Origin: Syncephalis fuscata S228
Taxonomy: Eukaryota; Fungi; Zoopagomycota
Assembly (NCBI GenBank): GCA_025786725.1
Contig: JAHLTZ010000002.1
Location: 186,001 to 250,000, forward strand
DNA: 64,000 nt
Direction of reading: 5' to 3'
Shown here one piece after another: positions 1-29,400 of this stretch. The notes under the pieces are model-generated. The model was not told where the DNA came from, ran no database searches, and worked only from the letters and a program-made list of their open reading frames with translations. Positions within the stretch are counted from its first letter, which is position 1; every line of letters starts with the position of its first letter. The position numbers and the translations under genes are program-made.

Positions 1-1671
1 CTTTGTAGCCAACACGTTTCACAGTAAACATGCCAACATACAATCGATGTAGTTGGTTGTTTGTAATTCTCAATGCAAATAAGACATTTGCCTGCATTGG
101 AGATCAATTGTTCCTATCATAAATGAAATAAATAGTTTATAGTAGTTAGTTCATAGTATAGCTATCAATAATGCATGTATTACTTGTTGTCTAATACGAT
201 CTTTAAGAGAAGCGATTAATAAATGAGCACGAGCTAGATCATCTCCCACTACTGATGATGATGATGATGTTAATACAGAGGTTGATTCAGCATTGGTCAT
301 TTCCATATCCGTTAATCTATCTGTTGATGTTCTAATAGTGTATTATATTAGATTATTAGATGATGAATATTACTATGCTATAAGATTATAGTACTTACGG
401 TGTAGGATCAGTAGATAGTGTTGCTTCAGTATGAATTACACGTCGTACATCTTCTTCAGTATATGTAATCTACATCGATGCAATGTTAAGTATATACCAT
501 TCTATCCTATTCTTCCTATTCTATTATAATCTAATAAAAGGATATTGTTGTGCTCCATACTTTTCGGTATCATCAAGATCAATATCGAGTTCTTCATTTG
601 TATCTTCTTCTACACGACGTGTTGAAGTACTGGCCAGTGCTATTGTAATATATGAATACATTTAATCTACAATATAGCCTATATACTATTACCTGATGCA
701 CCCCCTTCAAGCATAGAAGTAACCCGTACTCGTGTCTGGCCCGCCCATGTATATTCTTCAAATGTCATATCGGTATGATCAGATGCCGCATTACTCGCTG
801 TTGTTGTTGTAGTACTCTATACGTGTATTAATAGACTATAATATTCATACTACTAAGTAATACTAACAAGTACAGATGGTCCATTAGGTGTATCCAAACA
901 TTGATCAATATGTGCATTAATCTGGGTCAAATCACCCGATAATGAAATACCACACATAAAACATGTTGATTCTATTAATTAATTAATTATATTATATTAT
1001 ATTATATTATATTAATACTCTATATAATTACCTATTATTTCACGATCTCCTCCTCGTCGTCGTCGTTCTTGTGGCAATAAGAACTGTGCTGCTTCATCTA
1101 ATTGATCATTATTAAGACTATGACTACCACCTAGTATATTGTTATCATTATTAATACTATTATAGATAATTCTAGCTATTCATCTATTAATCAATTACCA
1201 ATGGTAGATAGCCATTTATCGCGTTGTTCAGCTCGTCTCTTTATTTTATTAATAAGCTATATCATATTTATATAAATAGGTCATTATTATACAAAATACA
1301 CCACTTACTTGATCAGGGGTCTCTTTCTGTGGTGTTGACTCGCCAAGAATACGATGTTTAGCCGCAATGGCTGCACCACGCTTACCTAGATGTCTATTAT
1401 GTCATTAGTATCAATAGAACAGCTAAATCATACGTACGTTGTACCATCACCAGTCATACTACTACTACCACCACTACCACTATTCGTATCTGTATTTAAT
1501 AAAGATAGTTTAGGTGTGGCCAATAATGCTAGTTCTTTGCGATAATGTTGTTCAAAGTTGGTCTTTGTAATAGACTTTGAACATAATGGACACACGTGTA
1601 ATTCCTCTATGAAATACGTTAGATGAATAACAACACTATTAATAATAAGTATGAATTCAATAGTTACCCAT
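1..1671 (-). CDS. RNF220-like RING E3 ubiquitin ligase, multi-exon, 3' end runs off the window
   Basis: Spliced translation gives N-terminal MEELHVCPLCSK...FEQHY, the motif FEEYTWAGQTRVRVTSMLEGG, DDTEKYGAQQYTEEDV and a RING CLICIENYKQPTTSIVCWHVYCETCWLQ. These match the RNF220 motifs as recalled (EEYEWCGQKRIRAT; CWHVHCEECWL). Confidence 0.8.
465..545 (-). other. U12-type (minor) AT-AC intron, 81 nt
   Basis: Minus strand reads ...GCACAACA|ATATCCTTTTATTAG...ATACTTAACATTGCATCGATGTAGATTAC|ATATACTGAA. It has an ATATCCTT 5' site, a CTTAAC branch site ~20 nt from the end and an AC terminus. Removal restores YGAQQYTEEDV; retention hits an in-frame TAA. Confidence 0.9.
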
Positions 1672-29198: not shown

Positions 29199-29400
29199 AA
29201 AAAGGGGCTGTAGCGGAGGAGGTAGGATTCGTCTTACCTTGGTGCTGTCAGCAATGGCAGCATCTTCTCCATAATGCTATGGTAGCGCCGCTGTGGCAAT
29301 GCCATCGAAACGTCATCAAGAGTTTTGGCAGCTATAATTTTTCGGTCCAACGACCTAAAGGGTGGTCCCTTGGCTTCGCTCAAGCTGGGACTGCCTTCTT
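29199..29400 (+). ncRNA. U11: U11 snRNA (minor spliceosome), expanded form
   Basis: 5' AAAAAGGGGCTG, SL3 CGAAACGTCATCAAGAGTTTTG, closing CAGC, Sm site AATTTTT and a 3' hairpin, in the same order as vertebrate U11 as recalled (AAAAAGGGCUUC...GACAUCAAGAGAUUUCGGAAGCAUAAUUUUU). Confidence 0.9.

What the first reader, a model, noticed from the sequence alone, without database searches (positions are those of the whole stretch)
465..545. Obligatory AT-AC U12-type intron in the RNF220-like gene
The intron has a consensus ATATCCTTT donor, an ACTTAAC branch site and an AC acceptor. Only AT-AC splicing restores the conserved YGxxQYTExDV motif; the nearby AG acceptor is out of frame and retention gives a stop upstream of the RING domain. 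GT-AG gene predictors will mis-model this gene. Inference: slow minor splicing could rate-limit production of the RING-containing ligase. If animal RNF220 has a minor intron at the same codon, the intron would date to the opisthokont ancestor.
Basis: partly seen in the sequence, partly recalled or inferred. Interest (0 to 1): 0.8.

Follow-up and report, generated by a model that had tools for sequence, protein, structure and literature searches.

The report
Ancient minor intron in fungal RNF220
The 81-base gap is a genuine rare "minor-spliceosome" (AT-AC) intron in a fungal RNF220 ubiquitin-ligase gene. It sits at the same codon as the minor intron of animal RNF220, so it is very old but of an already known kind.

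Summary
Confirmed. Window 465-545 (minus strand) is an 81-nt AT-AC intron with the donor ATATCCTTT, an ACTTAAC branch box and an AC end. It lies in phase 2 of the Gln246 codon of a single-copy, 379-aa RNF220 orthologue (PF15926 plus a C-terminal RING).

A spliced cDNA contig removes exactly these 81 nt. Only the AT-AC placement gives recognised splice ends. Retaining the intron gives a stop after seven codons.

The genome has U11 (in this window), U6atac and a U12-like snRNA gene.

- A U12-type intron splits the same codon, in the same phase, in a tick and a pearl oyster (GT-AG subtype).
- The related fungus Thamnocephalis has it too (AT-AC subtype).
- Mouse and human RNF220 are already listed as minor-intron genes, with the same 5' splice-site 12-mer as the oyster.
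- The intron is absent in Lingula, a hemichordate, Basidiobolus, Podila, Calcarisporiella, Smittium and Dispira.

The best reading is an intron inherited from the opisthokont ancestor, lost many times, with a subtype switch.

The public protein for this gene is already correct, but the Thamnocephalis model is wrong at this site. The idea that slow minor splicing limits ligase production is untested.

The scan had already found other U12 introns in this genome, but not this one. Solid and well supported, but of moderate interest.

The parts
465..545 (-). U12-type AT-AC intron, 81 nt, phase 2, inside the Gln246 codon (ca|a)
   Evidence: cDNA contig skips exactly 81 nt. Only this placement gives AT..AC with the ATATCCTTT donor. 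The contig arithmetic fits.
537..545 (-). 5' splice site ATATCCTTT (U11/U6atac recognition)
   Evidence: Sequence; the only RTATCCTTT in the window. It is complementary to the AAAAAGGGG 5' end of the U11 gene in the same window.
485..491 (-). Branch-site box ACTTAAC. The presumed branch A is at 486, 21 nt from the 3' end of the intron.
   Evidence: Sequence. It gives six pairs plus a bulged A against the GUAAGGA box of the U12 candidate. Branch use itself is inferred.
465..466 (-). AC 3' terminus. An AG at 471-470, nearer the branch box, is bypassed.
   Evidence: The AG paired with the AT donor gives a stop (hand translation of the sequence; no such pairing is among the open-frame combinations).
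546..639 (-). Exon 8, ending ...DDTEKYGAQ + ca
   Evidence: PF15926 profile positions 186-210.
399..464 (-). Exon 9, starting a|YTEEDVRRVIHTEATLSTDPT
1..1671 (-). RNF220-like gene: 11 exons and 379 aa. The last 75 coding bases lie left of the window, at L001 1425-1500. The other nine introns are GT-AG: 1607-1667, 1394-1437, 1257-1308, 1131-1198, 972-1031, 817-867, 640-692, 332-398, 114-183.
   Evidence: Model built and identical to public protein P0001. PF15926 at 94.1 bits plus RING. Only one PF15926 locus in the genome.
29199..29380 (+). U11 snRNA gene, the machinery that recognises this intron's 5' splice site
   Evidence: Rfam RF00548, 47.5 bits against a gathering score of 39. The 5' end reads AAAAAGGGGCU and there is an Sm-like AAUUUUUCGG.

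Best explanation
Window 465-545 (minus strand) is a genuine minor-spliceosome (U12-dependent) intron of the AT-AC subtype. It interrupts the conserved Gln codon of the YGxxQ|YTExDV motif in the single RNF220-family E3 ligase gene of a zoopagalean fungus. Earlier scan notes name the species Syncephalis fuscata; the nearest named relative found here is Thamnocephalis.

Inferred mechanism, from the established model of minor splicing: U11 pairs with ATATCCUUU and U12 pairs with ACUUAAC, bulging the branch adenosine. U4atac/U6atac.U5 then replaces U11, and the AT and AC ends are joined out.

Removal is needed to make the protein. An unspliced message stops seven codons into the intron, about 70 codons before the RING.

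The intron is homologous to the known minor intron of animal RNF220. It was therefore inherited from at least the opisthokont ancestor, lost in many lineages, and switched between the GT-AG subtype (animals) and the AT-AC subtype (Zoopagales).
For: Shown here:
- Exact 81-nt excision in a spliced cDNA contig, with AT-AC as the only recognised termini.
- The resulting frame and motif match 54 family members.
- Minor snRNA genes are present: U11 at 47.5 bits (cut-off 39) in this window; U6atac at 37.8 bits (cut-off 33) with the AAGGAGAGA box; a U12 candidate with the AUGAGUAAGGA box.
- Genome-wide, ATATCCTTT-N20-110-CTTAAC occurs 39 times against 9 for the reversed control.
- Family assignment: PF15926 at 94.1 bits plus RING, BLASTP 1e-50 to Lingula RNF220, single locus in the genome.
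- Same codon and same phase 2 in Thamnocephalis (L004 2637-2722, ATATCCTTTACG...CCCTTGAC...GCAC), in the tick Ornithodoros (L013 1234-1402, ca|GTATCCTTTT...CTTAGC-13-CAG), and in the pearl oyster Pinctada (L012 17527-19259, ca|GTATCCTTG...CCTTGAC-13-CAG).

From the literature:
- Mouse and human RNF220 are minor-intron genes with 5'SS ACAGTATCCTTG and BPS TTGTCCTTGACC. That 12-mer is identical to the oyster's (PMC6717393 Tables S1/S2).
- Vertebrate-like isoforms P0046 and P0054 diverge exactly at this codon with Gln changed to His, as a phase-2 junction would give.
Against: - The branch box is 21 nt from the 3' end (about 29 nt in Thamnocephalis). This is longer than the 13 nt seen in the two animals, and a nearer AG is skipped.
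- ACTTAAC matches the consensus CCTTAAC at 6 of 7 positions.
- U4atac was not detected, and the U12 candidate scores below Rfam's cut-off.
- The RNA evidence is one assembled contig from one run whose library type is only guessed. It gives no read counts and no information on retention.
- The intron is absent at this site in 2 of 4 animal loci read here (mouse and human rest on a published list) and in 5 of 7 fungi examined. Inheritance therefore needs 5-7 independent losses.
- The exact codon position in vertebrates was inferred, not read from vertebrate DNA.
Confidence: 0.9

Rival explanations
1. The intron is real and U12-type, but was gained independently in Zoopagales and in animals at a favoured insertion site. 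On this reading it does not date to the opisthokont ancestor.
For: The distribution is patchy. There is no intron at this site in Lingula, Glandiceps, Basidiobolus, Calcarisporiella or Podila, and Smittium and Dispira are intronless. A plain event count (2 gains plus 2 losses, against 5-7 losses) does not favour inheritance. The subtypes also differ: AT-AC against GT-AG.
Against: The codon and the phase are the same, and both introns belong to the rare U12 class, roughly 0.2-0.5% of introns in such genomes (PMC10639083). Two independent gains that both happen to be minor-type at one nucleotide position are very unlikely. Switching between AT-AC and GT-AG is an established process. Another intron, after LEGGxx, is also shared between Zoopagales and animals, which shows that old intron positions persist in this gene.
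Confidence: 0.07
2. The 81-nt gap in the cDNA contig is an artefact, either reverse-transcriptase template switching or an assembly collapse across the 4-nt ATAT repeat at both junctions. Alternatively the intron is cut by the major spliceosome at non-canonical sites.
For: The junction has 4 nt of microhomology ('both = 4'). The evidence is a single assembled contig. An in-frame GC-AG alternative exists nearby.
Against: The deletion restores the frame and a motif conserved in 54 homologues. Its ends carry the full U12 donor and a branch box. Thamnocephalis has the same intron without that microhomology, and animals have it at the same codon. Every other junction of the same contig is a clean GT-AG intron.
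Confidence: 0.02
3. One reading: the intron acts as a regulatory brake. Slow or conditional minor splicing limits how much RING-containing ligase is made, and retained transcripts give a truncated protein or are degraded.
For: Retention gives an early stop. The branch-to-3' spacing is sub-optimal and there is a competing AG. Human RNF220 shows low-level retention and alternative splicing around its minor intron in published tables (PMC6717393 Tables S5, S7).
Against: There are no retention data for this fungus, because contigs cannot show it. In the fungus Rhizophagus, minor-intron splicing showed no proliferation-linked regulation (PMC10639083). Repeated loss of the intron in many lineages argues against an essential regulatory role.
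Confidence: 0.12

Closest known systems
Minor (U12-type) intron of mammalian RNF220, listed in the Minor Intron Database (Olthof et al. 2019, PMC6717393)
   Same: Same gene family. The exonic bases before the intron (ACA) are the same. Both have a U12 donor (TATCCTT) and a CCTT(A/G)AC-type branch box. By inference, both split the same Gln codon of YGxxQ|YTE in phase 2; this was read directly in tick and pearl oyster.
   Different: The mammalian, tick and oyster introns are GT-AG subtype, 169-1733 nt long, with the branch box 13 nt from the 3' end (measured in tick and oyster). The fungal intron is AT-AC, 81 nt, with 21 nt spacing.
U12-type introns of early-diverging fungi (Basidiobolus, Rhizophagus and others; Larue & Roy 2023, PMC10639083)
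   Same: Same class of intron and machinery, in a phylum (Zoopagomycota) already reported to keep minor introns. Some of those introns are conserved with animals.
   Different: Neither RNF220 nor Syncephalis appears in that paper's main text. Basidiobolus itself lacks this particular intron.
Other AT-AC introns noted by this scan in the same genome (TatD, POLD1, SGF73, LplA, SRSF10)
   Same: Same donor consensus and a similar length (69-98 nt). Several are conserved across lineages.
   Different: A different gene. Here the conservation reaches animals with a subtype switch, and the orthologue's minor intron is already catalogued in mammals.

Membership tests
U12-type (minor) intron, AT-AC subtype | 5' splice site /ATATCCTT directly at the exon boundary | tested here: met
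   ATATCCTTT at 545-537, immediately after exon base 546.
U12-type (minor) intron, AT-AC subtype | TCCTTAAC-like branch box close to the 3' end, with no polypyrimidine tract | tested here: met
   ACTTAAC at 491-485, 6 of 7 against CCTTAAC. The 20 nt downstream (ATTGCATCGATGTAGATTAC) is not pyrimidine-rich. The 21-nt spacing is longer than the usual 10-15 nt.
U12-type (minor) intron, AT-AC subtype | AC 3' terminus and exact excision in RNA | tested here: met
   A spliced contig removes 81 nt, and only the AT..AC placement has recognised ends. One contig, no read counts.
U12-type (minor) intron, AT-AC subtype | Minor-spliceosome snRNAs encoded in the genome | tested here: inconclusive
   U11 (47.5 bits, cut-off 39) and U6atac (37.8 bits, cut-off 33) pass. 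U12 scores 34.6 bits against a cut-off of 53 but has the GUAAGGA box. U4atac was not found.
U12-type (minor) intron, AT-AC subtype | Splicing depends on U11/U12/U4atac/U6atac | not testable with these tools
   Needs snRNA blocking or a minigene assay.
RNF220 E3 ubiquitin ligase family | PF15926 RNF220 domain followed by a C-terminal C3HC4 RING | tested here: met
   P0001: PF15926 at 94.1 bits (cut-off 26), residues 5-256; zf-C3HC4_2 at 47.4 bits, residues 326-365. The exons match the profile in order.
RNF220 E3 ubiquitin ligase family | Orthology to animal RNF220 (single copy, strong mutual similarity) | tested here: met
   BLASTP 1e-50 with 38% identity to Lingula RNF220. One PF15926 locus in the genome. 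The top hits of the RING exon are proteins named RNF220. No formal tree was finished (timed out).
RNF220 E3 ubiquitin ligase family | E3 ligase activity | not testable with these tools
   Biochemical assay needed.
Same intron as the animal RNF220 minor intron | Same codon and phase in an alignment of orthologues, and U12-type signals in both | tested here: met
   Tick L013 ca|GTATCCTTTT...CAG|g tat tcc, oyster L012 ca|GTATCCTTG...CAG|a ttc agt, and this gene ca|ATATCCTTT...TTAC|a tat act. All in the Gln of YGxxQ[YF][TS]E.
Same intron as the animal RNF220 minor intron | The position of the catalogued mouse/human minor intron is this codon | tested here: inconclusive
   The MIDB 12-mer ACAGTATCCTTG is identical to the oyster's. 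Vertebrate-like isoforms break at this codon. No vertebrate DNA was read; human-like contigs were deliberately avoided.

The most novel reading that the evidence does not exclude
Zoopagalean fungi may choose the 3' end of minor introns differently from animals. In both Syncephalis and Thamnocephalis, the RNF220 intron has its branch box 21-29 nt from the 3' end, against 13 nt in animals. It uses AC while skipping a nearer AG. This could reflect a changed 3' splice-site ruler in their minor spliceosome, consistent with the undetected, presumably divergent U4atac and the divergent U12. The sub-optimal geometry may also make this ancient intron a tunable brake on RNF220 output.
Probability: 0.1. 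Interest if true: 0.55.

Novelty: new member of a known kind. Interest (0 to 1): 0.3.

Why it matters
The finding adds one cleanly documented case of a minor intron kept at the same nucleotide position from zoopagalean fungi to ticks, molluscs and, by inference from a published list, mammals. It comes with a subtype switch and many independent losses. Cases like this are useful for reconstructing the ancestral set of minor introns and for calibrating loss rates.

In practice, it flags a wrong public gene model in Thamnocephalis and a 6-nt acceptor error or variant in the pearl oyster model. Both are caused by the minor intron.

It does not change what is known. Minor introns in Zoopagomycota and in mammalian RNF220 are both already published.

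Tried and rejected
- The motif count alone is not significant: 1 found against 2.0 expected.
- U4atac was not found in the genome, and the control genomes are prokaryotes, so that blank says little.
- A maximum-likelihood tree of 93 homologues did not finish in time and was dropped. An exhaustive intron-combination script also timed out and was replaced by hand-derived introns checked arithmetically.
- Look-ups for a coral (P0161) and a fish-like protein (P0050) found no genomic record, so cnidarians and non-mammalian vertebrates remain unread.
- Full-text searches for 'RNF220 + U12' and 'Syncephalis + U12' found nothing relevant. The link was only in supplementary tables.
- The GT donor at 560 and the GC donor after 554, each with the AG at 471-470, were considered as major-type alternatives. 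The first gives a stop. The second is in frame but contradicts the 81-nt cDNA gap.
Exons were searched by reference. The joined translation was made only inside scripts. Whole-protein searches used P0001, a public protein that proved identical to the model.
I avoided fetching proteins that looked mammalian (P0031, P0036) and used only published tables for mouse and human.

Full report
**Observation**

On the minus strand the window reads ...gaa aag tat gga gca caa ca|ATATCCTTTTATTAG ... GGTATATACTTAACATTGCATCGATGTAGATTAC|a tat act gaa gaa gat gta cga. The proposed intron is 545 down to 465, 81 nt. Its donor ATATCCTTT is at 545-537, ACTTAAC at 491-485, and the terminal AC at 466-465.

The donor 9-mer alone is not significant: there is one match in 64 kb against 2.0 expected. 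The case therefore rests on other evidence.

**RNA evidence**

One public run (X1; library type only guessed, kept as assembled contigs) holds 44% of the sampled words of the gene.

Laid on L001 (window position = L001 position - 1500), its contigs are spliced at every intron of three neighbouring genes, so the run is cDNA.

- A 1670-nt contig crosses the site with a skip of exactly 81 nt and 4 nt of positional ambiguity.
- Of the five equivalent placements, four have meaningless ends. The fifth is window 465-545, with AT..AC and the full ATATCCTTTT donor.
- All other junctions of this gene in the same contig are GT-AG.
- Three junctions were not listed. I derived those introns from the reading frame (44, 52 and 60 nt). 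Their sum, 156 nt, is what the contig's own coordinates require: 779 exonic letters between two anchors (allowing for a one-base placement shift). So nothing is inserted at the AT-AC joint.

**Gene**

The model has 11 exons and 379 aa, with a four-base first coding exon. Its last 75 coding bases lie left of the window. It is identical to P0001, a protein already in NCBI nr. The deposited annotation therefore already handles this intron.

P0001 has PF15926 (RNF220) at 94.1 bits and a C-terminal C3HC4 RING. It matches Lingula RNF220 at 1e-50. It is the only PF15926 locus in the 29.4-Mb genome.

Exon-by-exon Pfam scans gave matches in the same order as the profile. The joined translation was made only in scripts.

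**Consequences of not splicing**

Retention reads QYPFIRL**, a stop seven codons into the intron and about 70 codons before the RING. The AG at 471-470 is out of frame with the AT donor, and also with the GT donor at 560. One in-frame GC-AG alternative of 84 nt (giving YGITYTEEDV) exists. It has a poor donor, loses the conserved Gln, and disagrees with the 81-nt gap.

**Machinery**

| snRNA | Place | Score | Note |
|---|---|---|---|
| U11 | window 29199-29380, + strand | 47.5 bits (cut-off 39) | 5' end AAAAAGGGGCU, complementary to CCUUUU of the donor |
| U6atac | contig C315 | 37.8 bits (cut-off 33) | AAGGAGAGA box |
| U12 candidate | contig C157 | 34.6 bits (below the cut-off of 53) | AUGAGUAAGGA box, which pairs with ACUUAAC |
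| U4atac | not detected | - | - |

Across the genome, ATATCCTTT-N20-110-CTTAAC occurs 39 times against 9 for the reversed pattern. This points to a real population of short AT-AC introns and agrees with earlier scan notes.

**Age of the intron**

A search with the RING exon returned 374 proteins at E<=1e-10. Of the best 150, 54 carry the YGxxQ[YF][TS]ExD[VIL] motif. I read the genomic loci of eleven orthologues.

| Organism | Locus | Intron at the Gln codon |
|---|---|---|
| Thamnocephalis (same order, Zoopagales) | L004 2637-2722 | Yes: AT-AC, 86 nt, same phase (caa ca|ATATCCTTTACG...CCCTTGAC...GCAC|g tat acc gag) |
| Tick, Ornithodoros turicata | L013 1234-1402 | Yes: GT-AG U12-type (cca ca|GTATCCTTTT ... 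CTTAGC-13 nt-CAG|g tat tcc gaa) |
| Pearl oyster, Pinctada imbricata | L012 17527-19259 | Yes: GT-AG U12-type (cca ca|GTATCCTTG ... ACCTTGAC-13 nt-CAG|a ttc agt gag) |
| Lingula | L005 | No |
| Hemichordate, Glandiceps | L011 | No |
| Basidiobolus | L009 | No |
| Calcarisporiella | L010 | No |
| Podila | L008 | No |
| Smittium | L006 | No (gene intronless) |
| Dispira | L007 | No (gene intronless) |

(The eleventh look-up, a coral protein, had no genomic record; see 'Not done'.)

- The public Thamnocephalis model P0004 reads into the intron (YGPQQYPLRGENIALS) and is wrong there.
- The oyster assembly was identified through PMC12506671. Its public model uses an AG 6 nt further on.
- Mouse and human RNF220 are listed minor-intron genes with 5'SS ACAGTATCCTTG and BPS TTGTCCTTGACC. 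That 12-mer is identical to the oyster's (PMC6717393 Tables S1/S2).
- Vertebrate-like isoforms P0046 and P0054 diverge at exactly this codon with Gln changed to His, as skipping the next exon from a phase-2 junction would give.
- A second intron position, after LEGGxx, is also shared by Zoopagales and animals.

**Reading**

Two independent gains of a rare-class intron at one nucleotide position are very unlikely. Minor introns are about 0.3-0.55% of introns even in minor-intron-rich fungi (PMC10639083). I therefore take the intron as inherited from at least the opisthokont ancestor. That implies 5-7 losses among the lineages sampled, and a switch between the GT-AG and AT-AC subtypes. A plain event count does not by itself favour this, and I keep parallel gain as a rival at about 7%.

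**Oddities**

The branch box lies 21 nt from the 3' end here and about 29 nt in Thamnocephalis, against 13 nt in the two animals. Here an AG 16 nt from the branch A is bypassed for the AC. In Thamnocephalis I have no RNA, and an AG three bases upstream of the AC would also be in frame.

**Function**

Published work on Rhizophagus gives no support for proliferation-linked regulation of minor splicing in fungi. Repeated loss of this intron also argues against an indispensable role.

**Not done**

- No vertebrate DNA was read. I avoided proteins that looked mammalian and used only published tables for mouse and human.
- Look-ups for coral and fish-like proteins found no record.
- No tree was completed.

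**Verdict**

This is a new, well-documented member of a known kind: an inherited minor intron in a phylum known to keep them, in a gene already catalogued as minor-intron-containing in mammals.

Noticed in passing
L004 2637-2722 (Thamnocephalis sphaerospora, record KZ992449.1): The public protein RKP10515.1 (P0004) reads into the AT-AC intron (YGPQQYPLRGENIALS) and then uses a false GT-AG pair, so it loses the conserved YTE. Splicing as AT-AC gives YGPQQYTEDDIVR and a 349-aa protein. An AG three bases before the AC would also be in frame. There is no RNA to decide between them.
   Followed up: partly
L012 19259-19266 (Pinctada imbricata, GCA_033119305.1): The public model P0132 joins ca| to an AG 6 nt downstream, giving YGKPH-EVD. 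The upstream CAG, 13 nt after the CCTTGAC branch box, gives the conserved YGKPQFSEVD. This is either a model error or a tandem-acceptor variant of the minor intron.
   Followed up: partly
window 29199-29380 (+): A U11 snRNA gene lies in the same window as the minor intron. Its 5' end reads AAAAAGGGGCU and it has an insertion in stem-loop 1. The scan had already noted it.
   Followed up: partly
L001 955-1400 (+) and L001 1-830 (-), just left of the window: A small LYR-motif (Complex1_LYR-like) gene converges on the RNF220 gene. It has two very short introns (43 and 47 nt). The 3' ends overlap enough that one cDNA contig spans both genes. The gene order RNF220 / LYR / ATP12-like is the same in Thamnocephalis (L004).
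   Followed up: partly
window 1668-1671 and 1394-1437 (-): The first coding exon contributes only ATGG, a start codon plus one base. One intron is only 44 nt long. Both are consistent with the public protein P0001.
   Followed up: partly
window 470-471 (-): An AG 16 nt downstream of the branch adenosine is skipped in favour of the AC at 21 nt. Used with the AT donor it would shift the frame.
   Followed up: no
P0002 (hit 2): A 3179-aa protein matches residues 37-59 of the RING exon in 35 separate stretches. It appears to be a giant protein built of repeated half-RING-like units. Its origin is unknown.
   Followed up: no
alignment: The phase-1 intron after LEGGxx (window 640-692) falls in the same alignment column as an intron in Thamnocephalis, Lingula and Glandiceps. 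It looks like a second old intron position in this gene, here of the major type.
   Followed up: partly
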